This document shows positions 36,454 to 62,579 of a stretch of 64,000 bases of DNA, piece by piece; position 1 is the stretch's first letter; every line of letters begins with the position of its first letter. The translations under genes were made by a program, and so were the position numbers. This stretch comes from Octopus bimaculoides (Eukaryota). Location of the stretch: positions 25,157,060 to 25,221,059 of the forward strand of contig NC_068990.1 of the NCBI RefSeq assembly GCF_001194135.2, written 5' to 3'. Below the pieces are notes generated by a model that worked only from the letters and a program-made list of their open reading frames with translations, was not told the DNA's origin and ran no database searches.

Positions 36454-38777
36454 NNNNNNNNNNNNNNNNNNNNNNNNNNNNNNNNNNNNNNNNNNNNNNN
36501 NNNNNNNNNNNNNNNNNNNNNNNNNNNNNNNNNNNNNNNNNNNNNNNNNNNNNNNNNNNNNNNNNNNNNNNNNNNNNNNNNNNNNNNNNNNNNNNNNNNN
36601 NNNNNNNNNNNNNNNNNNNNNNNNNNNNNNNNNNNNNNNNNNNNNNNNNNNNNNNNNNNNNNNNNNNNNNNNNNNNNNNNNNNNNNNNNNNNNNNNNNNN
36701 NNNNNNNNNNNNNNNNNNNNNNNNNNNNNNNNNNNNNNNNNNNNNNNNNNNNNNNNNNNNNNNNNNNNNNNNNNNNNNNNNNNNNNNNNNNNNNNNNNNN
36801 NNNNNNNNNNNNNNNNNNNNTATATACTATTATTCTAATTAGTAGAAGTTACAAAGTGATTCAAAGGCTTGTATGAAACTCTTGTCCCTTGAGTCACTTT
36901 GTAAATTCTGATTAAATTAATCTTTCCTGCTATAAGCATAAGGCCTGAAATTTTGTGTGTTTGTGTATTTCTAAAAATAATAAAAATAATAATGTAGTTA
37001 GCCTATGGTTTATAATGCTCATGCTATGGAAAGAAAACAAATGTACACCTCTCTTATTTTTTCTCTTTGCACACAGAGTAAAATTAAGTAGATTTCCTTA
37101 ATTATTTAATTATACCACTGACAAATGCAAAATGTGCAAATTTCAGCTAGTCTGTCCTGGCTTGTGTTTGATCTAAATAGCTATATGCATTAAGTTTTCT
37201 CCGTGGGCAAGAGAATGAGGGCCAACCAGCCATGAAACGTACCAGGATAATAGCCTTTATTTTTCAGTGTGCAAAGAGAATAACATCATATATTTATGCT
37301 TGTTTATTTTCAACAGAGCAGCCCTTAAATGACCAATGACTGTCAGTAAGGGTATTGAAAGTCTAGTGTTCCTGTAGAGCTATATTATCCAAAGCATCCT
37401 ATTTTATTTAGGACAGTGGAGTGAAATTTAGGGGTAATTTAGCTACTATTTCTAGCAGGTTGAGTGACAACACAGAGACTCATGCTAATAACAACCAGTA
37501 ATATAATAAATAGGATAAATTCAAATAAGACTGTAACTATTCTCTACAAAAATTGGTTCCATATCCATATCCATATCCATCGACAACTTTCGAAATTAAG
37601 AAATAAATATTTTAAGGAAAATAAGAATTTACCTTCTGCATCCAGCAATTTCGTAACGCCAAATTCAGATTCAGCAATGTTAAAAGCCAAATTTAGATTC
37701 TGTCGTGGAGTATTTCTTCGCACCTGCCTATAATCAACCAAGTCAGGTCTAAAAGAGAAAAAAGAAGGAAAAAGATAAACTTAAGCAAAAAACAAAAAAA
37801 ATGAAATAGATTGTAAATCTCAAAGAAGTTTGTAAATATAAGGAGGCACCCGGTGTTGCCCGGGAATGAAATTTTTCCTTATATATTAGAAGAAAAAAGC
37901 AAAATATGTTGTATAGAAATTTGTTATTCTAAATTCAATTTATTCTTCAATTGGGGTACAATTTATTCTTTAATTGGGAAATCAATTCTGAATTCATAAT
38001 ACAAAATAATAATAAACAAAAATACAAAATTTATCACTTTTATGAGAGGAGATAAATTCTACCACTTATGTTGAAGGAAGCCTGATGCAGCTTTCCGACT
38101 TGCCAGTCCTTAGTCAAACCATCCAACATGAAACCAGCATAAAAAGCAGACATTAAATGACAATGATGATGACCCCCAGAAAGACAAAGTTGACCTCTGT
38201 AATTTGACCTTAGAACAGAGGCGCTGTATCCAAATACAAGACATTTTGTTTGATGCTCTACCAATTCTCCCAATCCCCACCCCTGAATAATAACTGTTCC
38301 AAATATAGGCACAAGCCCTGAATTTTCGGTGGAAAGAGGAGAATAGCTGAGTGCATCAACCCCAGTACTTGACCGGTAATTTATTAACTCCAAAGGAAGG
38401 AAAGACACTGCTGACTTAGGTGGGATTTGAACTCAGAATGTAGAAAATCAGAACAAACACCATAAGGATGTTCTGATTCTGCCAATCTACAATCATTTCA
38501 CTTTCTCATGCTAGAATGAGTTAGTCTAATAAGGAAACAAATAATCAGAAAGGCAGGCATAAAATGGTAAAAGTAAACCTAGATAATCTACAAGATCTTT
38601 CAACCCTTACCTGTGTCTGTGAATTATGGAAAGGAAGGCTTTGCCATCCCGCCAGCTTGTAGAGAAGTCTGTAACTTTAATACCAGGATAGCCCTCTGTT
38701 GTTCGGCGACTCCATAGGAGAAGAGCTTCTTTAGCAGTAAGGTTTTCAGGCTGGCCAGGCACAACAACATCAGATAT
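1006..38777 (-). CDS. Multi-exon plakin/spectraplakin family gene (dystonin/MACF1/Shot/plectin-like), partial: CH2 domain, plakin domain with SH3, and following spectrin-like repeats
   Basis: 24 exons with GT-AG borders and matching phases. Translation shows CH2 motifs ([49 protein letters not shown]) and plakin motifs ([28 protein letters not shown]3 'ICFMLPPP'). Exact orthology cannot be decided by eye, so no symbol is given. Confidence 0.95.
2187..2380 (-). CDS. Plakin exon: [64 protein letters not shown](R)
   Basis: CAG acceptor, GTTAGT donor, 194 nt, phase 0 to 2. Spectrin-like heptad pattern with conserved W. Confidence 0.93.
2947..3238. mobile_element. hAT-Charlie-like MITE
   Basis: TIRs CAGTGCTACTCAAA / TTTGAGAAGCACTG; 8-bp flanks GTCTAAAT / GTCTAAGC (6 of 8 match). 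Confidence 0.8.
5609..5747 (-). CDS. Plakin exon: [46 protein letters not shown]
   Basis: CAG acceptor, GTTACT donor, 139 nt, phase 2 to 0. Confidence 0.9.
7184..7341 (-). CDS. Plakin exon: [52 protein letters not shown](R)
   Basis: CAG acceptor, GTAATT donor, 158 nt, phase 0 to 2. Confidence 0.92.
7930..8148. mobile_element. TTAA-flanked piggyBac-like MITE, family B
   Basis: TTAACCCTTTAGCATT...AATGCTAAAGGG. Related copies at about 29501-29699 (next to a family A copy) and about 2510-2915. Confidence 0.7.
8841..8998 (-). CDS. Plakin exon: (E)[52 protein letters not shown]
   Basis: CAG acceptor, GTATCT donor, 158 nt, phase 1 to 0. Confidence 0.9.
9839..10013 (-). CDS. Plakin exon: [58 protein letters not shown]
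   Basis: CAG acceptor, GTTAGA donor, 175 nt, phase 0 to 1. Confidence 0.9.
10803..10917 (-). CDS. Plakin exon: [38 protein letters not shown]
   Basis: TAG acceptor, GTATGT donor, 115 nt, phase 2 to 0. Confidence 0.9.
11931..12022 (-). CDS. Plakin SH3 exon: [30 protein letters not shown](R)
   Basis: CAG acceptor, GTTGGT donor, 92 nt, phase 0 to 2. 'PS.CF..PPP' motif. Confidence 0.94.
12843..12905 (-). CDS. Plakin SH3 exon: [21 protein letters not shown]
   Basis: CAG acceptor, GTAAGA donor, 63 nt, phase 0 to 0. Confidence 0.92.
13138..13245 (+). repeat. (GA)n/(GACA) microsatellite
   Basis: Direct inspection. Many other (TG)n, (TA)n, (GA)n and (AAT)n tracts occur throughout the window. Confidence 0.95.
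13601..13747 (-). CDS. Plakin exon: [49 protein letters not shown] (start of SH3)
   Basis: CAG acceptor, GTAAGT donor, 147 nt, phase 0 to 0. 'IIPLK.R' and 'ALC' motifs. Confidence 0.93.
14370..14492 (-). CDS. Plakin exon: [41 protein letters not shown]
   Basis: CAG acceptor, weak GTTCTT donor, 123 nt, phase 0 to 0. Confidence 0.88.
16028..16123 (-). CDS. Plakin exon: [32 protein letters not shown]
   Basis: Atypical AAG acceptor after a pyrimidine tract, GTAAGG donor, 96 nt, phase 0 to 0. WSWL.QL motif. Confidence 0.9.
18073..18177 (-). CDS. Plakin exon: (Q)[35 protein letters not shown]; alternative start at 18180 (NAGNAG)
   Basis: CAGCAG tandem acceptor, GTAAAT donor, 105 or 108 nt, phase 0 to 0. 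Confidence 0.95.
24690..24945 (+). mobile_element. Probable Penelope-like element terminal remnant with a degenerate hammerhead motif
   Basis: CTGATGA-[hairpin AGGGATAT/ATATCTCA]-GAGAC-AGCT-GTA at 24821-24860. Confidence 0.5.
25242..25403 (-). CDS. Plakin exon: [54 protein letters not shown]
   Basis: TAG acceptor, GTAATA donor, 162 nt, phase 0 to 0. Conserved 'L..F.QAA..E..WL..KE.E...RDWS'. Confidence 0.95.
26168..26245 (-). CDS. Plakin exon: [26 protein letters not shown]
   Basis: CAG acceptor, GTAAGT donor, 78 nt, phase 0 to 0. Confidence 0.92.
27122..27250 (-). CDS. Plakin exon: [43 protein letters not shown]
   Basis: CAG acceptor, GTAAGT donor, 129 nt, phase 0 to 0. Spectrin-repeat 'YG.D..SV' motif. 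Confidence 0.94.
27466..27670 (-). CDS. Plakin exon: [68 protein letters not shown]
   Basis: CAG acceptor, GTATTT donor, 205 nt, phase 2 to 0. Confidence 0.93.
29031..29194 (-). CDS. Plakin exon: [54 protein letters not shown](R)
   Basis: TAG acceptor, GTAACT donor, 164 nt, phase 0 to 2. Confidence 0.94.
29265..29492. mobile_element. TTAA-flanked piggyBac-like MITE, family A (about 220 bp)
   Basis: TTAA-CCCTTT(C/T)G(A/T)TACC...GGTAACAAAAGGG-TTAA. Other copies at about 21082-21297, 31564-32072, 51240-51448, 56419-56644, 15770-15965, 46700-46905 and 47205-47408. Confidence 0.8.
30811..30904 (-). CDS. Plakin exon: [31 protein letters not shown]
   Basis: CAG acceptor, GTAAGA donor, 94 nt, phase 2 to 0. 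Conserved [11 protein letters not shown] motif. Confidence 0.95.
31260..31390 (-). CDS. Plakin exon: [43 protein letters not shown](R)
   Basis: TAG acceptor, GTAACA donor, 131 nt, phase 0 to 2. Confidence 0.92.
31721..31930. mobile_element. Foldback/hairpin element with about 85-bp inverted arms, nested in a family A MITE
   Basis: TGTTGTGTCTGGGGAGAGTCATTCTCTTTTAGTGCC... is inverted-repeated as ...GGCACTAAAAGAGAATGACTCTCCCCAGACACAACA. Confidence 0.85.
32427..32522 (-). CDS. Plakin exon: [32 protein letters not shown]
   Basis: TAG acceptor, GTAAGT donor, 96 nt, phase 0 to 0. Confidence 0.93.
32690..33125 (+). mobile_element. Retroposon family 4 with (GAT)n tail
   Basis: GTGGTTGGCATTAGGAAGGGCATCCAGCTGTAGAAAC...CCAACCCATGCCAGCATGGAAAACGGA...ATGATGATG. 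Copies at about 41940-42300 (+), 26820-26980 (+), 22560-22760 (-), 24480-24630 (-), 54400-54600 (-), 16790-17100 (-), 50290-50520 (-) and 28430-28690 (-). Confidence 0.85.
33735..33955 (-). mobile_element. tRNA-derived SINE, family 3
   Basis: GTGGTTAGAGTGTTGCAC...GGTTTCGATTCCTGG...GTGTTCTTG(A/T)GCAAAACACTTCAT. Other copies at about 3545-3700 (+), 30380-30600 (+), 6830-7030 (-), 28200-28310 (-) and 42770-43050 (-). Confidence 0.8.
34040..34352 (+). mobile_element. CR1-like LINE 3' end with (CAT)/(ATT)n tail
   Basis: Peptide '[34 protein letters not shown]' is the CR1-type ORF2 terminal motif (FF..R....WN.LP..VV......FK), followed by a 3'UTR and microsatellite tail. Confidence 0.8.
34402..34521 (-). 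CDS. Plakin exon: [40 protein letters not shown]
   Basis: TAG acceptor, GTGAGT donor, 120 nt, phase 0 to 0. Resembles the Shot-type 'EYR...REKT...FPPTLIEMK' motif. Confidence 0.95.
35661..36055 (+). mobile_element. tRNA-derived SINE, family 2 (about 400 bp, internal (TG)n)
   Basis: GGCTGTGTGGTAAG...GGTTCAGTCCCACTG head and CCAAAGCCTTG(T)GAGTGGATTTGGTAG core. Other copies at about 62305-62792 (-), 54750-55150 (-), 9230-9700 (+) and 56705-56870 (+). Confidence 0.85.
36454..36820. other. Assembly gap (367 N), probable location of the missing plakin exon
   Basis: N run flanked by (TG)n and (TA)n. Other gaps: 17261-17330, 40614-41025, 42202-42211, 48170-48179, 62544-62579. Confidence 0.95.
37633..37748 (-). 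CDS. Plakin exon, CH2 C-half: [38 protein letters not shown]
   Basis: TAG acceptor, GTAAAT donor, 116 nt, phase 2 to 1. Confidence 0.97.
38611..38777 (-). CDS. Plakin exon, CH2 N-half: [55 protein letters not shown](R)
   Basis: CAG acceptor, GTAAGG donor, 167 nt, phase 0 to 2, classic CH2 sequence. Confidence 0.97.
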
Positions 38778-40470
38778 CTGGAGAAAAGAAAAAGAAAAAA
38801 TATTGAGATTACTTCATTGATGTAGAATATTAAAGCAATTCTCTGTTTCTGCTATTTTAAAGTCTCCATTGTTTGAAGGAAAACAGTAATGTTACTCTGT
38901 TCCCTCTGCAAACAAGACAACATTTTTATATTGGATTAATTAGTTTCCTTTATGAAATAGAAGATGGGGACAAAAGCCAGAATAAGGGAAATACTGACTT
39001 TTAAGAACATGGCTTAGACTTTATAGAGAACAGAAAAGTTGCTGTAATGTAAATTAATGTTGGATTTAACAAGTTCTAGTGATGAGAGAAATATTAACAA
39101 ATTATTATTCAGTGACAGAAGACTAGCTTCTGTAAGCTTGAAAAGTCCAGTAAAATGAAATGGCCCTAGAAAATTATATTTATTTCAATGATAACAGAGT
39201 GATAAAAGGTAAAGTAAGTCACAACCAGATTTGATTTCATAATTTAAAAGTATAAAACTTATGTGCTATTAAGCACTTGACCCACAAGCCTAAAATAACC
39301 TCGTGCACGCATGTGTATGATTGTGTGCGTGTGAAATTACAAGGAAGTTATATTGGCATTGCAACAAAGATTCTTGTGAAATTACAATTACTCTGGTCAA
39401 ACTGACCAGTAATAAAAACTCATTGTTGTAATAAAACATCTAAACATGCTGGTGGTTAGTAAAAAAAAAAAAAAAAAAACATTATCAAAATTATGACCCC
39501 TGCCTCCTCAGTTCATGAAGATCTTATTTAATCATTTATTAATATTCTCTAGATTCGTCAAATGATTTAAACAACTGGAAAGTTTCCATTGTTGAGAAAC
39601 GGTGTCATAGTCAAGGAACTTAAATCTGAAACACAGGTCTGCTTTACTCTGTGTAGGTGCCATCAATGGTAGAAAATTCACATCAATAAAAAGCACTACA
39701 GAGAATCTTGTCGGTTTGTAATTGGTAAATTCAGCCTCCCCTGAGACAAGAGTTGCCAGCCTTACATATGTATTATTTTTCAGCACCTTTAATGATACAG
39801 AAATTCATGATAAAGACCTGTTCTATGGATCCATGAGTTAACCCAAATGTATTAAAGGCCAATTCAAGTGTGGCAAGATTTGAAACTTAAAACTTTAATG
39901 TTAGCAAACTACATGTTAGTCTTTGAATGCAGTTCCTTTATTTACATTCCGATTCCTTGTGTTATCAACAGCACAAAGAAAGGAGACTACGATAGTGCGT
40001 CAGCCTAAATATATGTCTTGATGCAAACAGACAGTTGTTACGCAAATCAAAACCATCTACATCGTTTACTCAGACATCTCGTATTCATTAACCTTTATAA
40101 AAACCAACTCATCTTCTTATTTCTAGAATTACAAGATTAACTTAAGGCCTTGGACTAAAGAACATGATATAGTTAATCATATTTTTACGTAGAACAGGAG
40201 GAAAAAATATAAATGGAAAACCTTTAAAAATAAAGGAAAAAACAAATGTGACCAGCCACCAATCACCAGATCAAAATTGTGTCTAATTTAGGCAGAAAGG
40301 TCCTCAATTTGAGTGGGAGGTGTCAAGTTGATAATATAAACAACACCCCTTCCAGTATTTGGCTGGTACTTTATTTCATCGATCCTGGAATGCTTTATGC
40401 TGTCTCTTTCTCATGACCTTATACTAAATGGCTTACATCATCTAATACCTTACACACACACACACACACA

Positions 40471-40613
40471 TATATATAACGCTCAATAAACAATGTGTGT
40501 GATTGTGTGTGTGTGTGTATATAAAGCTCAATAAACAATATGTGTGTGATTGTGTGTGTGTGTGTATATAAAGCTCAATAAACAATATGCGCGATTGAGT
40601 GTGTGTGTGTGTG
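40471..40613 (+). repeat. Minisatellite of about 43-45 bp (ATATAAAGCTCAATAAACAATATGTGTGTGATTG(TG)n), three visible units running into the gap
   Basis: Direct inspection. Confidence 0.85.
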
Positions 40614-41025
40614 NNNNNNNNNNNNNNNNNNNNNNNNNNNNNNNNNNNNNNNNNNNNNNNNNNNNNNNNNNNNNNNNNNNNNNNNNNNNNNNNNNNNNNN
40701 NNNNNNNNNNNNNNNNNNNNNNNNNNNNNNNNNNNNNNNNNNNNNNNNNNNNNNNNNNNNNNNNNNNNNNNNNNNNNNNNNNNNNNNNNNNNNNNNNNNN
40801 NNNNNNNNNNNNNNNNNNNNNNNNNNNNNNNNNNNNNNNNNNNNNNNNNNNNNNNNNNNNNNNNNNNNNNNNNNNNNNNNNNNNNNNNNNNNNNNNNNNN
40901 NNNNNNNNNNNNNNNNNNNNNNNNNNNNNNNNNNNNNNNNNNNNNNNNNNNNNNNNNNNNNNNNNNNNNNNNNNNNNNNNNNNNNNNNNNNNNNNNNNNN
41001 NNNNNNNNNNNNNNNNNNNNNNNNN

Positions 41026-41375
41026 GTGGTGGTGGTGGTGGTGATGAAATGGTCAGGACATTTCTGATAGTGCTGATGTTGGGAATGATAACTATGGTGG
41101 TGGTGATGGTGGTAATGATTAATGATGAAATGATAATGATGTTTCTACTAGTGATGTTGATGATAATGAGGATGAAATGGCAATGATGGTTCTGTTAATG
41201 ATGGAGAGTGTGGTGGTGGTGGTGGTGACAATCACAAAGGATGATGATGAAATGCTTATGATGTTTGTTAGTGATGATGCTTGTAGAAGTGGTGGTAATG
41301 ATGTTGGTGGTGGAGTTGGCTTCTCTTTCCTCGCATTGCTGTTAAATGGTGGTGGTGGTGGTGGTGGTGGTGGAC
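41026..41375 (+). repeat. Degenerate (GAT/GGT)n low-complexity tract
   Basis: Direct inspection. A similar (GAT/AAT) tract lies at about 63130-63325. Confidence 0.85.
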
Positions 41376-41622
41376 TATTTACACCCCCACATCAGCCAAC
41401 TTCATGAGAACTTTTAAGTTTCATGCTTAGAGGAACAAACAAAAAATATTTATTTGTTTTGCAAGATTCCTGGTGTGAAATTGTGGGTTGAAAATGGAAT
41501 AAGCAGAACAAGAGGAGGCACAAGGGATGAAGAGTCACAGAAGAGGTCACAGGACGTATGAAGAAAGAGCTTGGATAAAGAAGCAAATATAATAACAATA
41601 AAGCTGAAGTAAAGACTAAATA

Positions 41623-41674
<52 letters not shown>

Positions 41675-43525
41675 AATTGGCAAAATATGACCATCCCCAA
41701 ATATAACAATTGAAAAAAATATAAAGCAAAATAAGAATAAAATAAATAATAAAACACAACCTCCTCACCCCACCCTCACATCCACACAGTAATGTAGTAA
41801 TCCTCTTAAATGTAATATGACAATGGCAAAAACTAAAGAAGTTATTTTGAAACTGAGATGTACTGGGGTGCACAGGGGAAGCAGTGATGTTTATGCCTTT
41901 TCTTGCCTAAAGTGGTAGTCATGATGTTAGATCCTCCATGCTGGTGACACATCAAAAGCACCATCCGAATGTGGGTGATGCCAGCGCTGCCTTGACTGGC
42001 TCTCGTGCCGGTGGCACGTAAAAAGCACCAACCGATCATGGTTGCTACCAGCCCCCTCTGGCCCCTGTGCCGGTGGCATGTAAAAAGCACCCACTACATT
42101 CTTGGATTGGTTGGCGTTAGGAAGGGCATCCAGCTGTAGAAACGCTGCCAGATCAGACTGGAGCCTGGTGCAGCCTCCTGGCTTCCCAGACCCCAGTCGA
42201 ANNNNNNNNNNCTGGTGCAGCCTCCTGGCTTCCCAGACCCCAGTCGAATCCTCCAACCCATGCCAGCATGGAAAACGGACGTTAAACAATGATGATGATA
42301 ATGAAATAAGAACTGCAGCTACATTTGATCTGGGACACACACAAGCACAGATATGCATAAATGCAAACACAACTAAGGTGAAGTCTTCTGATTTTCCAGT
42401 CCCTGCTGAACCGTCCAACCCATACCAGCATGGAAAACAGATGTTGAATAATGATGATTAAATGACGATGACACAACCACACACAAAAACACAATCTCAC
42501 ACACACACACACACACACACACAAATATGCACATGTTACCAGTTGGCTCAGCCAGCTGGAGATTTTCTTTCCTTGTTTTTTTGTAATGGCCCAATAATGC
42601 GAGCGCTTGTGTTTAATCAATGAAAATTGAGAATGAGAGGGGGGGGGGGAGCAAAGAAAGAGAAAGCGAAACGAAATTCCACCGAGGCTAGCTAACTGCT
42701 CAGGTGAAAGTAAATAAGGATTTAATAACATACATACAAGGTTATAAAAAAACTGGTACTGTCAGTTACAACGACGAGTGTTCCAGTTGATCCATTCAGC
42801 AGAACAGCCTGCTTGTGAAATTAACATGCAAATGGCCGAACATTCCACAGACACACATGTACCCTTAACGTAGTTCTCAAGGAGATTCAGCATGACACAG
42901 AATGTGACAAGGCTGGCCCTTTTGAATTACAGGTACAATTCATTTCTACCAGCTGAGTGGACTCTAGCAACGTAGAAGAAAGTATCTTGCTCAAGGACAG
43001 AATGCACCACTGGGTATTGAACTGAATACCCTAACCACTAAGCCATGTGCTTTTGCAGCACAAGGGGTTACATCCACAGCAGCTGGTGGGGGTAAGGGTC
43101 ATTTTGCTTTTTCCATGGCAATTACTAGAGCATGTCAATTGTTAATGCTATTGTTGCATTTCACCCCCAACAACACTACAGTCTGGGAGAATGAAATGTA
43201 GTGTCAACCTTGGTGAAATTTGAACTCAGAACATCTATGGCTATCTAGGGTTATGTGTTGTCAATGTTTGATTAAGTCAGATTATGGGGAGGTTGTGTTG
43301 CCTACAGATGGATGAAGTAGTAGGGAAGAAGGATTAAATAGTGATTAGGATGAAGGATATAAGGAGTGTAGGTGGTAAGACACTGGAAAGATGATGAAAG
43401 ACAGAACAGGTGGTAGGAGGGGGTTAATGTTGTAGTAAAAGTAGAACTGGTAAGTTTGGTGAAGTAGAGGTCTAAGGTAGAGCACCATTTGATGGAGGGA
43501 GAGCCAGTTACTGTGACATAATACT

Positions 43526-43564
<39 letters not shown>

Positions 43565-43750
43565 TGCTAGACAGATAGAGATAGACACAGACATAGAGAC
43601 AGACAGACACAGACAGATAGACAGAGACAGACAGACAGAGACAGACTGACAGACACAGACAAGCAGAAAGACAGAGTGGGGGAGAGAGAAAGTGGGGAGG
43701 GGAAAGAGACAGAATGATAATAATAGAACAGAATGAAATTATTTTCTTAC

Positions 43751-44074
43751 CAAACTCTGGCAGCAACTTTTAAAGGTAACATATGGCTGTAAAGTCTTCC
43801 AGGGGTTGACTTTTATTGTCGGACTAATTTGGCACATTTTATGATCACAATAACTAAGAGATCCACACTCATCACAACGGTGTAAAGGTCCCAGCGTTTG
43901 TGAAGAAGGCAAGAGGTGATGTTGGTCCAAATTGTTGGATCTCCATATCGGAATATAATTAGTAGTGTTATCAGATTCTTTAGTTTCTTCAGTTTTAGAA
44001 GCAGCTTTGGAGATTGGTCTTGGACTAAGAGACCGAGCTTGTTTAAGGACTTTCCAGAAAGATGATCTGGACAT
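43751..44074 (-). CDS. Candidate alternative first coding exon (108 aa, MSRSSFWKVLKQ...KSCCQSL) splicing to the CH2 exon
   Basis: Stop-free ATG ORF in unique non-repeat DNA ending at TTG|GTAAGA, a strong phase-0 donor that matches the phase-0 acceptor at 38777. Confidence 0.7.
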
Positions 44075-44789
44075 TTGTTATTGTTTTCTTTTTTGTTTTA
44101 TTTTGTTTTAAATTGATAATTTGATTAAAAGAAGATTTTAAAAAAAAAATTTGCATGTGTTATGCAAATTAACCAAAATACATTTTCTTATCCCATATGT
44201 GTTTCAAATATATAAATAAATATTCAACTAGGAAAAAATGCATAACTGACAGGTTTTGGAAATGTCGATATTTAACAGACATGGAAAAATATTTTGTGGA
44301 AAAAACTGATGTTAAATGTTGGTAATAACGGAGAGAAAATACATAACATTACCAGTCAATCACTATTATAGAACAGCGATTGGTTTTTTCCAAGAATATT
44401 TTTAAAATCACTTGTAAAGGATAGTTCTGTTTTCATTTCCAAGACAGTTAAAGAAAAGGAAGAAACAATAAATAATATTTCAGAAATTCTAAAATAAATA
44501 TTGAAGATTCACTTTCACTTGAAGAATATAGATATTTCTAGAAGCTATAGGAAAGAAAGAAACATTGACAGACAAAGAAACACTAGATTCATAGATGTGT
44601 GTAATAGCCGAGCAGGCCGGCTGTTGTAAAATAAATATAAATATATGAATATATATATATGTATATATTAGTCTATATTAGTCTACACTGGGTAGATCTT
44701 AACATTGTATTACGTAGTTGATATATTTGTTTTTCTCTCTTCATGCTAAGCAATCACCAGAAATCTATTCACCGGAGATTAACAGAGAT

Positions 44790-44832
<43 letters not shown>

Positions 44833-45180
44833 AGAAACAAGAGAGACATTTAACGTCAATAGCTTAATCAATATGGCAGTGATGCAGCTATCTGGTTATT
44901 TGTGGAGGCCTACCTATGAGGGGTTGGTTACACATTCGTTGTTACAGCTACTCACCAATAATGTAATAAACACAACTCAACAGGCTCAATTAAAGTGGCC
45001 AGTTTGAAATTTCCTGAAGTTTTGACTTATTACACAACAACCAACTCGACAACGAAAACAACCATGCTGATATACTGATTAATAATTATCATCATATTCT
45101 AATTAAAATTTTCATTTCTGTTTCAGGAAGCAAAAAAAAAAAAAAATACATTCCTTCTCCATTCATTCATTCATTCATTC
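44075..45180 (-). promoter_or_regulatory. Putative 5'UTR/internal promoter of the 44074-43751 exon
   Basis: About 1.1 kb with no recognisable SINE or MITE copy directly upstream of the ATG, with a (GA)n/(TC)n tract at about 44790-44830. Inferred from position only. Confidence 0.35.
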
Positions 45181-47902
45181 ACTCGATCATTTGTTCACAA
45201 GTAATGAAAAGGAAAAAAGATCTGAACTGGACAATACAAAGCTATAAATTGGACAACGATAATTGCCAATTATTTTGGTACCCTGCAACCAAATTATTTT
45301 CCTACCAGTCTTACTTGCATTGTTGACAGCTAAAGTTGGTTGCGAGATACAGCTCTGACTGAAGGATATAACATAGAACACTAAACTTCCCAGCCAAAAA
45401 GCTGACGCCATACCAAATTGATCACAATGATTACTGAATATATTATTATTATTATCATTATTATTATTATTAGGGTGTAAACAGGCAGAATCTTTAACAC
45501 ATCGGACAAAATGTTTAGTAGTATTTCTCACTTTTTACATTCAAATGTCACCAGGATTGACTTTGTCTTTCATTCTTTTGGTACTTAATTGCAGCAGTTA
45601 AGCACTAAGGGTGATGCATTTGACTTACCCCTCCCTCCCTCAAAATTGCTGCCCCTGTGTCAAAATTTGAAATTATTATTATGATTATAACAATTATTAT
45701 CTGAGTTGTTGAGCTAGCAGAAATGTTAGTGTATCAGGAAAAATTATTTTCTACTTTCCAAGTTCAAATCTTGCCAAGGTCAACTTTCATCTCTCTGGGG
45801 CTGATAAAATAAATTCAAGTACTGGGGTTAATGGTTTTGCCTACTCCCTCTACACTCAAAATCATTCGCTTTGGGCCTAAATAAAAAAAAAACCATTGTT
45901 GTTGTTATTATTATTATTATTATTATTATGGCAGCAGCAAACTGGCAGAACAGTTAGCATGCTGGACAAAATGCTTAGCAGTATTTCATTTGCCACTACA
46001 TTCTGAGTTCAAATTCTGGTGAAGTTGATAAATTAAGTATCAGCTGAATACGTGTGTGTGTATGGGGGAGGGGTCGATGTAATCGACTCATCTCCTTCTT
46101 CCAGATTGCTGTGAATCATCCAAGAGTTGTCTACAAAGAAGAGAAAAAAAGTCCACCTTGCCCAGCATTAATAACTGATGCCAGGCCAATGACTTGTTGT
46201 TTAGTCCTATGTCAGCTCTTATTGAACAGAATGTGTTGTGGTACTTAGTTATATCGCTTTATAGTCTAAGTTAAATATAATAAAATAATCCCCAGTCACG
46301 AATTAAGGGGTGATTTAGTTGACTTTTACTTTACCGTCTTCCACAAGCTGAATGCAGGAAGCCGGAATAAATACTGCCAGACAATGTAGCTGATGTTCTG
46401 CTGACTCAGCCAATTTGCTACCACATTCCTCACTGGATAATTATTTCTAATTAGAGTTTTGATGCTCAATACCTTCCATTAAAATTCCATATCAATTTAT
46501 GCTTCAAATATCAACTTAATAAGGACAGAGTTATTTTTACTAAATTCTTCATTAATTTCCATATTGAAACAAGGCAATAATGCATTTCAATATAAATATG
46601 ATAGCAAAAGGGTTAAGGAGATTTATGTTCAAAGGTATCCCAGCCATGACCATCCAGTCACTTTTTACTTAACCACACTAAATTCCAGATGACATCATTG
46701 AAATTTTGATACCAACTTCCTGAGACCTTCGTTGGTTCTATGATACAAACTGTTTAAAAGTGATCTAAATTAAAAACTTTCCATCAAGTTTCATATTAAT
46801 TTATGTTCCAAATATCAGCTAAACAGTGACAAAGTTATTTTATTCCAATTCTTCATTATTTTCAAACTTAAATGAAACAAAGGACATGGTAACAAAAGGG
46901 TTAATGATTGAACAACTATCCAAGCCTCACTAATACTAACTAGGACTGACCAAGAAGATTTGAAATTCTAAAGCTAATTCTCTTTCTTCATTGATATAAA
47001 TTATAGAAACAGATGATTTACAGTTGGATGGCTTTTTCTAATTCTATCTGTTCAATCATAAACAAGGTTGAAAAAAATAAGGGAAAATAATGTGCCTTGA
47101 CTAACATATAATAGAGTGAATGGCAACATTCGAACAATGCAATACAGCATCTCATGTATTTCGCCTCCAAATCACCATTTTTTATCATGCTTATAGAAAA
47201 CCTTTGTTACCATATTTCTGCTGAAATATACTGCCTTTGTTTCAATTAACTTTGAAATTAATTTATTAAAACCTCTGTCATTATGTTTCAAACATAAATT
47301 AACAAGAAATTTTGATAATTCTAATTTCAGTAATTTTAAAACAAGAAGTTTGTTTTAAAATTACTGAAATGAAGGACAGTCTTGGGTGGGTTGGTGTCAA
47401 AAGGTTAGTTATTTGTGCAAATACTGTGGGGTTTTTTTTTTTCTATTACATATAGAGAAAGTCATTATATCTGTAAAAGGATAGTAAATGAAACTGCGTG
47501 TTGAAAATTTTCTCAAGATTATTAGTGGGGCAAGTGAATTAAAATGGCCTGGAAGTATTGGTTAAAATAAACCAGTTGGATGAAATCAGGACAAACCTTT
47601 AAACTGGAATTTTATTTGGCAACAACCCTAAACCTTTCATTCTTGATCTGAGACCAGTTTTCTTTTTTCTTCAAGAATTATAAAATTTATCTGTAGCACT
47701 AATTGATATGCCAATTAAATACAAGTGTAATGATGAAGCCTTTTTGTAAGTGTTTGATCTGGTAGAACTAGCAACCGAGTCTTCTCAAATCACATCCTAT
47801 TGGCTTAAAAGAAAAAAAAATGTGGAGGCACAATGATGATCTAATGATGACCATTAAACAATGGTTACAAAAAAGGAAGGATGATCACAGCCGGAACACC
47901 TT

Positions 47903-47959: not shown

Positions 47960-50900
47960 CTAACAGGGGACAAAACAACAAGCTTTTTGTTTGTGGTGAC
48001 AATAGTGTTGGGAATAGTTGCAATAACACAAGAAGTAATAGCATTAGTAATAAAAAGTGACAGCAATGATGATGGTGATGTTATAAATTTACCTTTGATA
48101 TCTTCTGCCCTCCCCCACTACCACTACCACTACCACCACCACCACCACCACCACCACCACCACCACCACNNNNNNNNNNTAAGTAGAACACTGGATCACC
48201 TGAAGAAAATTAACAGGTTAAACCTATTTGGAGGTAAATCTGCTTAATATCAGAGAGAGAAAAATACAGAACACACACAAATATATGTGTATTCCCCAGC
48301 ATGGCCGGAGTCAAATGAGTGAAACAAGTAAAAGATTTTATATGTGTGTGTGTGTGTACACACACACACAGAGTAACGTTTGTTTCTAGGTCAAGCTATA
48401 TATATATATATAAAATCAATTTAACATTAAACTGAAGGGTTATTTAATACTTTTTAGTAGTGTCTATATTTACTAAACCATTACAAGGAAAATACTGAGA
48501 GTGACTTTGAAGTTTTGTCAGACTGTGACAAAGGAAAGCAAACTGAAAATTGGAAGTTACTGTCAAACTTTCTCTTGTAAAGGCTTAGTTTTATACATAC
48601 ATAGATACCCATATATGTTTCAGGATTCCTTACAATCTAGGAGCACCAACTCATAGGATGCCAGGACTAGCTAGGTGCCATAACAACACTGAGATCACAG
48701 TAAGGTAAAACAACCATTAGGTGTCACCTGTTGGTAGAGTACTGCAGGTATGTAGATACATAGGTACCAAATCCAATATAGACCATAGATCCGACTTGGG
48801 GTTGGTTCCAGGTGTGGCGTAGGCATGAAAGAAGAACACAATTCTATTTGTGTTCTTTTATATATATAAGGTCATGGTAGGGTATAAAGATAGGTATTCC
48901 AAATGAAGCACTCAATCCAAGTTCTGGGGGGCTACCAACACTATTGGATTCCAGACTAATACTGAAATTTTCAACTGTAGAAGATCCTGGTTTCATGACA
49001 GTATTTTACTCTTCACGAAACTAACACAACAATTTCACGCACACACACGATGGTCTTAAAATGATGATGGTTGGGAAGCAAGCTTTTTAACTGCACAGCC
49101 ATGCTTGAACCCATTGCAGACTGACTTAAAAAGCAGCAAAGGACACTGGCTTAGGTGGACAAGAAGAGTCTTACTAAAAATAAGTTGGGAAGGACAAAGA
49201 TTTTCCTAACATTCTGCAAAAAACATGCCTGGACAAAGGGAAACATTGCCTCATTTGGAAACAGGAGAGAGTTGGGGACAAGAAGGATAACTGGCCATAG
49301 GAAATGTGTTGCAAGAAACCTTGTCTGACCCATGAAAACATGGAAAAGTAGACATGAAATGATGATGAAGTGTTGATATAATATCAGTTTTTTTTAATGG
49401 TTTTTTTGGTGATTATTGAGTGAATTACTGTGAAGTACCTCCTCTACTTCATCATTTCATAATGCAGCAGATTGTCTCTGAGGTTTCATTGTTGGGCATT
49501 AAACAATTGAAAACACTGATAGCAGTTTGAGGTTTTAGGATTAGTAATATCACTGTCCTGAAGTAAACAGTCACATCTATAGCACCTTATGGCTAATGTG
49601 AGGTGAAAATGGGTGATCAATAAAAATTTGGAGTTCAAACTAGGTTGTACAGTATTGAATTTCATTGATCTATCAGATCAACAAAAAAGTTAACTTGTTA
49701 AAGCTAACAACACACATACACAGCTTTATGTATCTCACAATGCAGTAGGACCTGTCTAATTAATCTCTTTGTATCTATTCAATAAGTTTAGAAGAAATCT
49801 AAATAATAATAATAATAATAATGATTTCTTCCTGTTTGTTTCATATTCCAATGCAAATATATGCATCACTGACAGACCACAGAAAATTCTCATTACGCAC
49901 AAACAATATCCTAATATCCAATAATTTTATTTGTTTTTTTCTGGGTTGTATCATTGAACAAAATTTAATCCATATAAAGATTCATGAATATTATCTTCTC
50001 CAACAAGACATCTTTTTTTCTTTCTTGCTCAAAGATTCCTAGGAGATTAAAATATAAAGGATATTTTTCACAAGATTAAACCATATAAAGAGGACTAATC
50101 CCCTATTTCTGTACAGATGAGAGCCACAGGATAGATCACATCAAAAAACCTTCATACATTTTGTCTCTTGATAGAATTTGGTACCATTTTGAATCTTGTA
50201 AAACAGGTTCTGACTTCAGTATAGAAGCTATCATTATTCCAGTCTTGGAGAAACTACAAACGTTATGAGAACTGCCATTCTTCCACTGGCTTATCATCAT
50301 TCAATGTCCATTTTCCAAGGCGGCATGAGATGGATGGTTGACTAGAGCTGGCTAGTCAGAAGATTGCACGAAGCTCTGCTGTCTGTCTGGCATGGTTTCT
50401 ATGGCTGGATGCCCTTCCTAATGTCAACCACTTAAAGTTTACTAGGGGCTTTTACTTGGTACCAGCAGCAGTGAGACCACCAAATAATGTACAAGACAAC
50501 ACCTCTCCAATGAGTGAGGAGGAATGTTGAGGGAAGTTGAGGTTTTGTAGCAGGTGATGAAAGGTTAGAGTATGAACAAGGGGACAGAAATAAGTGTCTT
50601 GCAGTAAAAGAAATACATGGCAACATCAGCAGGAGAGAGGGGGGAGAAAGGGGGAGAGAAGACGGTGAAGATGTGATGGGGGAGGGGGTAACACAAGTTA
50701 CAGGGAGGTTTATATAAGTGAAGCAGAACCAAGGATTGAATAGGGTGAGTGGATGGGTGGACACAAATAGAGAGTAGGGGTGTTGGGGTTAGGAGTTATG
50801 TTGTGGGGAAAAGATTCAACAGGGGGACATTATGTGCAAGTAGGTTTGCAAGGGCATGAAGGGAGAGTGGGAGATAAGGTGGAGGGGAATACAGTGAGTG

Positions 50901-53481: not shown

Positions 53482-56400
53482 GTAGTAGTAGTAGTAGCAG
53501 TGCATTGCACAAGAACACAAGAAACAATAGAAATAAGACACTAACCAAGCTGGAAAAAAAAGAAAAAAGAGAGGGAGATGGCAGAAACCCAACAGACAAG
53601 CAAAAATAACTTGAAGAATGCCAAACACCATATTCTAAACACACCTGAGACACATGGAAGGAAGTTTAGAGTGGAAGAGTGAAGAGAATAGCAAAACGGC
53701 TACAAAAGACAAACAACAGTAATGGTGCGAACACAGTCCACCTTTCTCTGGAACTTTTTTTTTCTCTTTCTTTATATTTAACCATTTTGTATTCTAATGT
53801 ATTTCTTTTTTCTTTGTCTAATGTTAATATGGAAGGGGATGTCAGTTTGACTATTTACATGTGTTGCTGTTGTTGTTGTTTAGCCCCAGGTTAACATTGG
53901 TCTAGTAGAGCTTTGATGAAAAAGGTCTTCCAGCTGTGATCACTCCATTTTTGCTTTCCTTTGCTTTTTTTTTTTTTCTTCTTTTTGCAGACAAAGTATT
54001 ATAGACAGCATTATCTAATGTGTCCCTTTTTTTTTTTTTTTTTAACTCAGTAGCTGTTTGATATGAGAGAGATTTAACTGTTATATCTAGCAAGTTTAGC
54101 AATCACACACACACTCCCCTGTTAGCTTGCTATTTGCTTATGAATTATGGAACTTTTGCTTTTTTTTTTTTTTTTTTTTCAAACAAAAGGATGTTATATG
54201 TCAGTTCCAGCCACTGAAACTGGTAGGAGGGGAGTGGTGCATATGTGTGTCTAAACAGATTGAGGCAAGAAGAGAATGTATTCCACTTTGGGATATAATC
54301 GTGGGAACTTATTAAATGAGAACTAGAGTTGGTCCTTCATCAGTGGCCAATGACTACCATCACTAGCTTGCATTATTTTGATTGAGAACTAGTACTCATC
54401 ATCATCATTAAACATCCGCTTTCCATGCTAGCATGGGTTGGACGATTTGACTACACCAGACTCCAATCTGATCTGGCAGAGTTTCTACAGCTGGATGCCC
54501 TTCCTAACACCAACCACTCCGAGGGTGTAGTGGGTACTTTTTATGTGCCAGTCTAGCGGTACTGGCAATGGCCATGCTCAAATGGTATTTTTTACGTGCC
54601 ACCTGCACTATAAACTGAAAACCACAAAAGTATTAGTTACCATTTCATTGTGGGATAAAAGCTCAGTGAGTTATTACTTCAGCTGGTAACAAAATTCTCT
54701 TTCTTGCAGTAAAGAGTAGATTGTATGATGCTTGAGTATGAAGAGTAATGCTGCAGGGTAGTGAAAATTTGGACCTTGAATATGTTTAGCATGTACTTGT
54801 TTCAGTCATTGGATTGCAGCCATGCTGAAACACTACCTTAAAGGGTTTTAGTTGAACAGATTGACCCCCAAGACTTTTTTATTATTTATTTTCTGGTACT
54901 TATTCTATCTAAGTTATGGCATGTAAAGAGACCAACACTAGTCATCAAGCAGTGATGGAGGGGAGGGGGACAAACAACACACACAAATATATATATGACA
55001 GGCTTCCTTACAGTTTCTACTAACCAAATTCACTCACAAGGCAGAGGTCAGCTGGTTAGGGTTATAGAAGACACCCAAGGGGCTATGCAATAGAACTACG
55101 CCTGAAACAATGTGGTTGGAAAAAGAACTTAACCACACAGCCATGCCTGAGGACAGATACTTTCTAATTCAATCAAGCCCTCATCGACTTTCTTAAGTTC
55201 TACTTGGAAAGATAAGTGAAGGTAGAGAAGAAAGTAAGTGCCCTCTCCTAGGAAATTTGGTGGGTGACTGTGGCAAAAACGGATCTACTCTAAACCTGGG
55301 CTTATAGACTGGAGGACAACAGTTGGGTGAGGACTTGGCCCTTGAAGGTCTGGGTGATCTTGGATCTGTGGGATTCTTTGATTGGTCCTCTACAGCATCA
55401 GGAAGACTACATCATTCATGTATTCCCATATTTTGATTACAATGTATACCTTTTATCACATTTCCTGTTCCTCCCTCTTTCTCCCCATCTTTTATGTAAT
55501 ACTCCCACAATTCGATACCCCTGTGGCAAAGAAAAGAAATTATTATTATTATTATCATCATCATTATTATTATCATTATTACAATAGCCCAAGGCAGCAA
55601 GCAAGACAAAGTGTTTAACAATATTTCATCCGTCTTTATGTTCTGAGTTCAAACTCTGTCAAGATTGACTTTACCTTTCATCCTTTGTGGGGAGGTCGAT
55701 GAAATAAGAACCAGTTGAGTATTGGGGTTGATGTAATCAACCAGCACCCATCCTTGAAATTGCTGGCCTTGTGCCAAAATTTTAAACCATTATTATTATA
55801 GAAAGGTGATGACTTAACTTTCTGATATAATATCCAACTACACACGTAAAGAAGTTATTTACTTAGCGTTAAGTTGCATGCAGCTCGACAAGTACTTAAT
55901 ATTAAATCCTTTATTGCCATTGGCCATAAATAAGCAACACATCAACAACATCCAACTACAAAAGTAACAACAATAACAACATCAACAACTGCTCCAATGT
56001 GCTTCAAATAACCTCAGGTAGCATATAGCAGCCATTATTATAAACAAGCTCCTCACCGAAAGTAATACTTAATGTTAATATGACATTTCAAAGAATTTAT
56101 GAGTCATGTGAAGAATAGCGTTGGTTAACATAGAATGTAATTAGGCATGAAAATAAACTATCACACAGATATATCTCCAAATTGCTTACTTTTAAGCATT
56201 GTTTAACTTATTTTCTAGTAAGTACCAATTCTCACCAGTGAAGCATTTTTCATTGCGATTTATCTTTAACACACACATATCCTCATCAGGGGATTTTCAC
56301 CAAGAAATCAGTTTTAATATAAATTTACATTCAGGAATTCTTTTAAAAAAATTAGTAAATCATTACTTTACAATGTTACATGAACAATGAAGTTGTGTAT

Positions 56401-62543: not shown

Positions 62544-62579
62544 NNNNNNNNNNNNNNNNNNNNNNNNNNNNNNNNNNNN

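What the first reader, a model, noticed from the sequence alone, without database searches (positions are those of the whole stretch)
43751..44074. Internal alternative first exon predicting a CH1-less plakin isoform
Seen in sequence: a 108-codon ATG ORF in unique DNA ends exactly at a strong phase-0 donor (TTG|GTAAGA), about 5 kb upstream of the phase-0 acceptor that starts CH2 (ISDVVV...). Established knowledge: vertebrate dystonin (BPAG1a3/b3) and MACF1a3, and some Drosophila Shot isoforms, use an internal promoter between CH1 and CH2 to put a unique N-terminus on CH2 and so lose normal F-actin binding. Inference: a cephalopod plakin has the same architecture with an apparently unrelated N-terminal peptide, which is either ancestral design with exon turnover or convergence.
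Basis: partly seen in the sequence, partly recalled or inferred. Interest (0 to 1): 0.7.

Follow-up and report, generated by a model that had tools for sequence, protein, structure and literature searches.

The report
CH1-less plakin isoform leader exon
A 108-codon exon inside a cephalopod plakin gene is spliced straight onto the second half of the actin-binding domain, making a minor isoform that lacks the first half; fly and vertebrate relatives of this gene do the same, so it is real but not surprising.

Summary
On the minus strand, an ATG at 44074 opens 108 codons that end at TTG|GTAAGA (donor after 43751). An in-frame TAA lies two codons upstream of the ATG.

The predicted 43751-to-38777 junction is present in assembled RNA contigs from three runs of the window's species and three runs of a second, closely related species. 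A DNA run is colinear across the donor.

The same CH2 acceptor also receives the CH1 end (…GLIWTIILHFQ) at roughly 5-25 times higher depth, so this is a minor isoform.

The peptide, its start context (TAA two codons upstream) and its donor (AGTTTG|GTAAGAA) are kept in a cuttlefish, Acanthosepion esculentum. There, amino-acid identity is 46-48%, the flanks no longer align, and dN/dS is about 0.2. The exon is therefore coding and old.

Not shown:
- The transcription start. No junction into the exon was seen, but RNA contigs run at least 0.7 kb upstream of the ATG in one species.
- Whether the transcript continues into the full-length plakin.
- Translation, and loss of actin binding.

CH2-only "type 3 / C-type" isoforms are already described for Shot, MACF1 and dystonin. 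This is a new member of a known kind, carrying a leader peptide found so far only in cephalopods.

The parts
43751..44074 (-). Coding part of the alternative leader exon: ATG plus 107 codons, giving the 108-aa leader MSRSSFWKVLKQARSLSPRP...KSCCQSL
   Evidence: Sequence and ORF list. Covered by RNA contigs in X1, X2, X3, X5, X9, X10 (organism A) and X4, X6, X7, X8, X11 (organism B). Orthologous ORFs P0001 and P0056.
43745..43750 (-). 5' splice site GTAAGA of the leader exon (phase 0)
   Evidence: Contigs leave the genome exactly after 43751 and continue with the CH2 exon start. The sequence AGTTTG|GTAAGAA is identical in the cuttlefish loci L002-L005.
44075..44118 (-). Minimal 5' untranslated leader. 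It is A-rich, has no ATG, and carries an in-frame TAA at 44078-44080
   Evidence: Organism A contigs reach 44077, 44094, 44112 and 44118 without loose ends. The TAA two codons upstream of the ATG is also present in L001 and L002.
44119..44790 (-). Possible extension of the exon (a long leader with 12 uATGs), or promoter region. The 5' boundary is unresolved
   Evidence: Organism B contig X8 is colinear from the junction to about 44790, and X6 has pieces to 44466 and at 44549-44713. Organism A has only low-depth contigs at 44516-44740. uATG count.
38778..43750 (-). Intron removed in the CH1-less isoform. It is the 3' part of the more than 25-kb CH1-CH2 intron of the major isoform
   Evidence: Junction contigs. 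DNA run X15 is colinear through the donor. Assembly gaps at 40614-41025 and 42202-42211.
38611..38777 (-). First CH2 exon ([56 protein letters not shown]). Its acceptor is shared by the CH1 exon and the leader exon
   Evidence: Sequence. Pfam CH domain PF00307, E=1.7e-20. Two upstream partners at the acceptor.
37633..37748 (-). Second CH2 exon ([38 protein letters not shown])
   Evidence: Its start is verified by the loose end at 38611, which maps to 37719-37748. Its 3' end is inferred from the GTAAAT donor in the sequence.

Best explanation
The stretch is the translation-start exon of a minor mRNA isoform of a cephalopod plakin gene of the plectin / MACF1 / dystonin / Shot type.

Shown:
- The exon's GTAAGA donor is spliced directly, in phase 0, to the acceptor of the first CH2 exon. 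CH1 is bypassed.
- The major isoform joins the CH1 end (...LIWTIILHFQ) to the same acceptor.

Inferred:
- The exon is most likely transcribed from its own start site inside the long CH1-CH2 intron.
- Translation starts at the ATG at 44074 and gives a 108-residue leader fused to CH2 and the plakin domain.
- The leader is largely disordered. It has a conserved basic amphipathic head with a Ser-Pro site (MSxxSFWKxLxxARSLSPRP) and a conserved HxCxxCG...C...C cluster.
- By analogy with Shot-C, MACF1a3 and dystonin type 3, the product has only half an actin-binding domain and so binds F-actin weakly. The leader would supply isoform-specific targeting or regulation. Candidate mechanisms are phosphorylation of the SP site, and Zn binding or acylation of the cysteines.
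For: Splicing:
- Junction contigs occur in six RNA runs of two species. X2 and X3, X9 and X6, X7, X8 each leave the genome at 43751 and continue with the reverse complement of ATATCTGATGT(T/C)GTTGTGCCTGGCCAGCC(T/C).
- Seen from the CH2 side, the acceptor has exactly two partners: the leader exon (depth 5.2 and 5.4) and the CH1 end (67.6 and 25.6; 102.9 in X1).
- These runs are RNA. CH1-CH2 and CH2 exon 1-exon 2 junctions are present, while DNA run X15 is unspliced.

Coding status:
- The open frame has p about 0.0013 by shuffling.
- The ORF is intact with no indels in L001, at 92% amino-acid identity.
- Organism B has only an in-frame 6-nt duplication.
- The cuttlefish loci L002-L005 keep a 111-codon ORF, TAA at -6, and the identical AGTTTG|GTAAGAA donor, while their 1.8-kb flanks do not align.
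- Window versus cuttlefish gives pN 0.32 against pS 0.70, so dN/dS is about 0.2, and about 0.12 for the first 24 codons.
- L005 comes from ERR12945500, which is Acanthosepion esculentum, a decapodiform.

First-exon status:
- No junction into the exon was seen in any of the 12 runs that covered it.
- The in-frame TAA directly upstream rules out a coding continuation from upstream exons.

Host gene:
- CH2 matches Pfam.
- The best PDB matches are the plectin and MACF1 actin-binding domains. Downstream exons match the plakin domains of plectin, BPAG1 and desmoplakin.

Precedent.
Against: - The 5' end is unmapped. In organism B the contig runs colinear with the genome to about 44790, which implies a leader of at least 0.7 kb with 12 uATGs. 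One uORF, starting at 44156, overlaps the main ATG and would hinder scanning initiation.
- Between close species dN/dS is not clearly below 1: 0.46, 0.65 and 1.3, on 6-14 substitutions.
- Some flanking blocks are as conserved as the exon between close species.
- Contigs carry only 20-30 nt of CH2, so the link to the rest of the roughly giant transcript is not phased.
- Two raw-read RNA runs of the same species label showed no reads on the exon. One of them also showed none on CH2.
- There is no protein-level evidence.
- The AlphaFold model of the leader is uninformative (pLDDT 44.7).
Confidence: 0.8

Rival explanations
1. It is a cassette or 'poison' exon rather than a first exon. On this view it is entered from CH1 or from 5' exons through an acceptor further upstream, and the upstream in-frame TAA then terminates the CH1 frame. 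The ORF would be used only by reinitiation, or not at all.
For: RNA contigs in organism B extend at least 1 kb upstream of the donor without a defined end. The exon lies inside the intron of the major isoform. No start-site data exist.
Against: No splice junction into the exon or its upstream extension was seen in any of the 12 runs that covered it. A colinear stretch of at least 1 kb is typical of a first exon, not an internal one. The ATG context, ORF and donor phase are conserved from the window's species to cuttlefish, with dN/dS about 0.2. That conservation is not expected for a mere NMD switch.
Confidence: 0.1
2. It is transcriptional noise. A cryptic intronic promoter, or stray use of a strong donor in pre-mRNA, yields a low-level chimeric RNA with no function, and the ORF is incidental.
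For: Depth is low: 3-12, against 25-100 for the CH1 junction. dN/dS is near 1 between the closest species, on very few changes. Unspliced contigs cross the donor in X4 and X5.
Against: The same junction occurs in two species and six runs. The ORF, start context and donor are retained in a cuttlefish whose flanking DNA is unalignable, with synonymous sites saturated but pN only 0.32. The open frame is improbable by chance.
Confidence: 0.05
3. It is a stand-alone small protein gene. The conserved product would be the roughly 111-136-aa peptide translated from the unspliced transcript, and splicing into CH2 would be a by-product.
For: Unspliced contigs exist (X4, X5). The unspliced frames close soon after the donor: 3 codons in the window, 25 in cuttlefish.
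Against: The residues after the donor are not conserved (VRK* versus VRTKKKLFLFF...). The donor hexamer and phase are strictly conserved. Spliced contigs are at least as deep as unspliced ones. No terminator or polyadenylation evidence was found.
Confidence: 0.05

Closest known systems
Drosophila Short stop (Shot) C-type isoforms, e.g. Shot-PC/LC
   Same: Both are plakin-family genes with alternative 5' ends. In both, a unique lead sequence is joined to CH2 only, alongside major isoforms that carry CH1+CH2. In Shot the N-terminal variants arise from four promoters (10.1101/122010).
   Different: The lead peptide is unrelated, with no hit outside cephalopods. The promoter is not mapped here. 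Neither actin binding nor function was tested here.
Mammalian MACF1a3 (ACF7-3) and dystonin/BPAG1 type 3 isoforms
   Same: These have half an actin-binding domain (CH2 only) behind an isoform-specific N-terminus. They are minor and tissue-restricted compared with types 1 and 2 (PMC4914211; 10.1101/122010).
   Different: The dystonin leads are reported to carry potential myristoylation or palmitoylation sites. The cephalopod leader starts Met-Ser, so it has no Gly2 for myristoylation. It is longer (108 aa) and has a conserved basic helix, an SP motif and a CxxCG Cys cluster. Tissue distribution is unknown here.
Plectin alternative first exons (1, 1a-1j ...)
   Same: The CH2 here is most similar in sequence to the plectin actin-binding domain. 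Plectin also diversifies its N-terminus with alternative first coding exons (my own knowledge, not tested here).
   Different: As far as I recall, plectin first exons splice ahead of CH1 and keep the whole actin-binding domain. Here CH1 is skipped.

Membership tests
CH2-only (type 3 / C-type) N-terminal isoform of a plakin/spectraplakin gene | The host gene is a plakin with a CH1-CH2 actin-binding domain followed by a plakin domain | tested here: met
   CH2 matches Pfam PF00307, E=1.7e-20. The best PDB hits are the plectin and MACF1 actin-binding domains, and downstream exons hit the plakin domains of plectin, BPAG1 and desmoplakin. Transcripts join a CH1 end...GLIWTIILHFQ, to the same CH2 exon.
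CH2-only (type 3 / C-type) N-terminal isoform of a plakin/spectraplakin gene | An exon with its own start codon is spliced in frame directly to the first CH2 exon, omitting CH1 | tested here: met
   The 43751^38777 junction is in X2, X3, X9 (organism A) and X6, X7, X8 (organism B). It is phase 0 on both sides. TAA lies two codons upstream of the ATG.
CH2-only (type 3 / C-type) N-terminal isoform of a plakin/spectraplakin gene | Transcription starts at an internal promoter, making this a true alternative first exon | tested here: inconclusive
   No junction into the exon was seen in the 12 runs that covered it. However, contig ends range from 44077 to about 44790 and are limited by depth and by a microsatellite. 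No CAGE, 5'RACE or long reads were available.
CH2-only (type 3 / C-type) N-terminal isoform of a plakin/spectraplakin gene | The exon lies between the CH1-coding and CH2-coding exons | tested here: inconclusive
   It lies 5 kb upstream of CH2 on the same strand. The last CH1 exon is not within the 25 kb upstream that the window holds, so its position further upstream is inferred from colinearity.
CH2-only (type 3 / C-type) N-terminal isoform of a plakin/spectraplakin gene | The transcript continues into the rest of the plakin (plakin domain, rod, C-terminal modules) | not testable with these tools
   Junction contigs carry only 20-30 nt of CH2, because the assembly graph branches there. No long-read run was listed.
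CH2-only (type 3 / C-type) N-terminal isoform of a plakin/spectraplakin gene | The protein is made and has reduced F-actin binding | not testable with these tools
   Only indirect support exists: purifying selection on the leader ORF, dN/dS about 0.2 against cuttlefish. The weak actin binding of CH2 alone comes from the literature.
Spectraplakin proper (MACF1 / dystonin / Shot orthologue) | C-terminal spectrin-repeat rod, EF hands and a GAR/Gas2 microtubule-binding domain | not tested
   These parts lie outside the window. Within it, only CH2 and plakin-domain exons are seen.
Vertebrate dystonin/MACF1 type-3 lead peptide (homology of the leader itself) | Sequence similarity to a known lead peptide, or an N-terminal Gly2 acylation motif | tested here: not met
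   The leader begins Met-Ser. An exhaustive HMMER search of 1.84 billion representatives, plus two word-indexed searches, found only cephalopod ORFs. There is no Pfam family for residues 1-108.

The most novel reading that the evidence does not exclude
The 108-aa leader may be a targeting module confined to cephalopods and at least as old as the split between the window's lineage and cuttlefish. Its parts would be a basic amphipathic helix, a phospho-regulated RSLSP site and a small CxxCG Cys cluster that binds zinc or is acylated. It would send a CH2-only plakin to a specific compartment.

Together with the fly and vertebrate cases, this would show that the internal CH1/CH2 start site is an ancestral bilaterian design whose leader exon has been replaced in each lineage.
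Probability: 0.25. Interest if true: 0.45.

Novelty: new member of a known kind. Interest (0 to 1): 0.3.

Why it matters
It adds a lophotrochozoan example to the fly and vertebrate cases of CH2-only plakin isoforms. This supports the view that switching off the high-affinity actin-binding half through an internal 5' exon is an old, general feature of these giant cytoskeletal linkers. It also identifies a conserved, previously undescribed leader peptide that could be tested for a localisation role in cephalopod tissues. For genome annotation, it is an isoform that automated pipelines may miss. The biology is expected rather than surprising.

Tried and rejected
Read laying:
So was 44250-45440. 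The junction was therefore proven from loose ends on each side instead.
- Raw-read runs X22 and X23, which carry the same species label, gave no reads on the exon. X22 also gave none on CH2, so no strand or read-count data were obtained.
- No PacBio run was listed.
Splicing to CH2 in cuttlefish therefore could not be tested.

Protein searches:
- Word-indexed searches with the peptide and with a 3-sequence profile found only P0001 and P0056.
- A search with CH2 returned only short arthropod or metagenomic CH fragments and no annotated cephalopod plakin. Whether NCBI already annotates this isoform could not be established.
- P0057 and P0058 from the exhaustive search are repetitive proteins with marginal E-values, and I rejected them as chance hits.

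Other:
- The AlphaFold2 model of the leader has pLDDT 44.7 and was not used for fold search.
- The accession SRR11869391, source of L001, could not be tied to a species in the literature.
- I rejected a retrocopy explanation, because DNA run X15 is colinear across the donor.
- I rejected RNA editing as the source of the 44024 variant, because the change is in the wrong direction for a minus-strand transcript.

Full report
**1. The observation**

On the minus strand, an ATG at 44074 opens 108 codons: MSRSSFWKVLKQARSLSPRPISKAASKTEETKESDNTTNYIPIWRSNNLDQHHLLPSSQTLGPLHRCDECGSLSYCDHKMCQISPTIKVNPWKTLQPYVTFKSCCQSL. The frame ends ...AGT TTG followed by GTAAGA, and the last exon base is 43751. Read through, it closes three codons later. 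Two codons upstream of the ATG there is an in-frame TAA.

At 38777 a pyrimidine-rich acceptor (ttttctccag) precedes ATA TCT GAT GTT..., which encodes [22 protein letters not shown].... This is the start of a calponin-homology domain (Pfam PF00307, E=1.7e-20). Both splice sites are phase 0.

- An open frame of this length is not expected from composition. Only 133 of 100,000 shuffles keep it open.
- Only 2 of 172 GTRAG sites in the window have 108 open codons before them in phase 0.
- The exon is single-copy in the window.

The description is accurate.

**2. Is the junction real?**

Public runs that hold the exon were found, and their assembled contigs were laid on the window.

In organism A (the window's species label):
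- Contigs from X2 (374 nt) and X3 (357 nt) cover 44094/44077 down to 43751. They then continue with 30 nt whose reverse complement is ATATCTGATGTTGTTGTGCCTGGCCAGCCT, the first 30 nt of the CH2 exon.
- X9 shows the same junction.

Seen from the CH2 side, the acceptor at 38777 has exactly two upstream partners in X2 and X3:
- the leader exon, at word depth 5.2 and 5.4;
- a sequence translating to ...GLIWTIILHFQ, the end of CH1, at depth 67.6 and 25.6 (102.9 in X1).

The same contigs also join CH2 exon 1 to the next exon at 37748, so these runs contain spliced RNA. A DNA run of the same organism, X15, is colinear through the donor, so the joined form is not a retrocopy.

In a second, closely related species (organism B), X6, X7 and X8 leave the genome at the same base. 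They continue with ATATCTGATGTCGTTGTGCCTGGCCAGCCC, which is that species' own CH2 start, differing from the window's at two synonymous positions.

The junction is therefore real and shared by two species. The isoform is minor, at roughly 4-17% of the acceptor's usage by contig depth. Contig depth is a crude measure.

**3. Is the exon coding?**

The peptide has no Pfam family. Its only relatives in 5.8 billion clustered proteins and in an exhaustive HMMER scan of 1.84 billion representatives are two ORFs called on genomic contigs.

P0001 / L001:
- It is 92% identical.
- Its exon has 14 substitutions and no indels. The flanks carry many indels, though flank identity is patchy (76-97%).

Organism B:
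- It has six substitutions and an in-frame 6-nt tandem duplication that adds Ser-Asp.

Between these close species the counts are too small to be decisive. NG86 dN/dS values are 0.46, 0.65 and 1.3, on 6-14 changes.

P0056 / L002-L005 is the informative comparison:
- The ORF occurs in four sequencing runs. One of them, ERR12945500, is described in the Sepia officinalis genome paper as short reads of A. esculentum. That species is Acanthosepion esculentum, a cuttlefish (Decapodiformes).
- The ORF is 111 codons to the same donor, at 46-48% amino-acid identity.
- The start context is the same: CAATAAGCAATG against CAATAACAAATG, with the TAA in frame in both.
- The donor AGTTTG|GTAAGAA is identical.
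- The remaining 1.5 kb of flanking DNA shows no alignable similarity to the window.
- Synonymous sites are saturated (pS 0.70) while pN is 0.32. This gives dN/dS of about 0.2, and about 0.12 for the first 24 codons.

This is the signature of a translated exon kept by selection across a deep cephalopod split.

Conserved elements of the peptide:
- the head MSxxSFWKxLxxARSLSPRP. It is basic and amphipathic, with a hydrophobic moment of 0.5-0.7, and a weakly predicted helix at residues 6-16;
- SLDQ;
- LGPxHxCxxCG followed by two more cysteines;
- the terminal Ser-Leu.

The AlphaFold model is low-confidence (pLDDT 44.7). It only suggests a disordered leader.

**4. Is it a first exon?**

This is the weakest point.

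- No contig in the 12 runs that covered the exon shows a junction into the exon.
- The conserved TAA directly upstream of the ATG means the exon cannot continue a reading frame from upstream exons.
- In organism A, contigs end at 44077-44118, just past an A-rich tract. Nothing is assembled at 44120-44515, and low-depth pieces (3.3-4) reappear at 44516-44740.
- In organism B, one contig (X8) is colinear from the junction to about 44790, where a (CT)n microsatellite stops it. X6 has pieces to 44466 and at 44549-44713.

Three readings of this pattern are possible:
- The leader is long, at least 0.7 kb. It would hold 12 uATGs with short uORFs, one of which overlaps the main ATG.
- There are several start sites.
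- The assembler merged pre-mRNA of the major isoform with the spliced form. Intronic contigs at similar depth exist in X1.

I could not resolve this.

A colinear stretch of at least 1 kb with no incoming junction favours a first exon with an internal start site. That remains an inference.

**5. The host gene and the position**

- The CH2 matches the plectin and MACF1 actin-binding domains best.
- Concatenated downstream ORF pieces match the plakin domains of plectin, BPAG1 and desmoplakin.
- Further plakin-like exons run down the minus strand to the window's start.
- CH1 is not in the 25 kb upstream that the window contains. The CH1-CH2 intron is therefore longer than 25 kb.
- The leader exon sits 5 kb before its 3' end, assuming colinearity.
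- The rod, EF-hand and GAR parts that would make this a spectraplakin proper lie outside the window and were not examined.

**6. Comparison with what is known**

Reviews state that all spectraplakins have N-terminal variants from alternative start sites that combine a lead sequence with CH1+CH2, with CH2 only, or with neither. The CH2-only form is called C-type in Shot and type 3 in MACF1 and dystonin.
- In Shot these variants come from four promoters.
- CH2 alone binds actin poorly.
- The dystonin leads carry potential acylation sites (10.1101/122010).
- MACF1a3 is a half-ABD isoform found mainly in brain and spinal cord (PMC4914211).

The cephalopod case has the same architecture. It differs in the leader, which starts Met-Ser (no Gly2) and has no detectable homologue outside cephalopods. 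No paper on cephalopod plakin isoforms was found. Whether genome annotations already list this isoform could not be checked.

**7. Verdict**

The exon exists, it is spliced to CH2 as predicted in two species, and its reading frame, start and donor are conserved as far as a cuttlefish.

It is a new member of a known kind, a CH2-only plakin isoform, carrying a leader found so far only in cephalopods. It is solid and useful for annotation, but only mildly surprising.

Still open: the promoter, the full-length structure, translation, tissue pattern, and any function of the leader.

Noticed in passing
window 44151-44171 (minus strand): ATTTGCATaacacATGCAAAT is an inverted pair of POU-octamer-like motifs about 80-100 nt upstream of the leader ATG. 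A T/A-rich TTTTAAAA stretch lies about 25 nt upstream of the furthest organism-A contig end (44118). In L001 the first octamer is kept and the second is changed.
   Followed up: no
window 44119-44790: RNA contigs lie upstream of the leader ATG. In organism B they are continuous to a (CT)n microsatellite; in organism A they are patchy (44516-44740). The stretch holds 12 uATGs. It could be a long 5'UTR, several start sites, or merged pre-mRNA.
   Followed up: partly
window 43969/43970: Organism B carries an in-frame 6-nt tandem duplication (TCTGAT on the coding strand) that adds Ser-Asp after codon 35 of the leader.
   Followed up: yes
window 44024: The X3 contig reads G for A on the + strand. 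This is a synonymous AGT>AGC change in codon 17. It is a polymorphism, not A-to-I editing, because the direction is wrong for a minus-strand RNA.
   Followed up: yes
window 43679-43750: Unspliced contigs cross the leader exon's donor into the intron in X4 (organism B) and X5 (organism A). This is pre-mRNA or intron retention. The unspliced frame stops after 3 more codons.
   Followed up: partly
window 40614-41025, 42202-42211, 36454-36820, 17261-17330, 48170-48179, 62544-62579: These are assembly gaps (runs of N). Two lie in the intron between the leader exon and CH2, so intron lengths are nominal. The 10-N gaps may be of unknown true size.
   Followed up: no
window 1-38777 (minus strand): A series of plakin-domain-like coding pieces runs down the minus strand. 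Examples are 27370-27660, 27113-27292, 25215-25385, 13571-13804 (which looks to me like the SH3-containing part; not tested), 9834-10079 and 2174-2500. The window holds the 5' third of a large plakin gene with long introns.
   Followed up: partly
window 32620-33010, 41842-42418, 22571-22744, 54543-54689: Recurrent ORF-like motifs (…FTCH.H…/…SQ.G.GT…) appear on both strands at several places. They suggest copies of an interspersed repeat in the introns.
   Followed up: no
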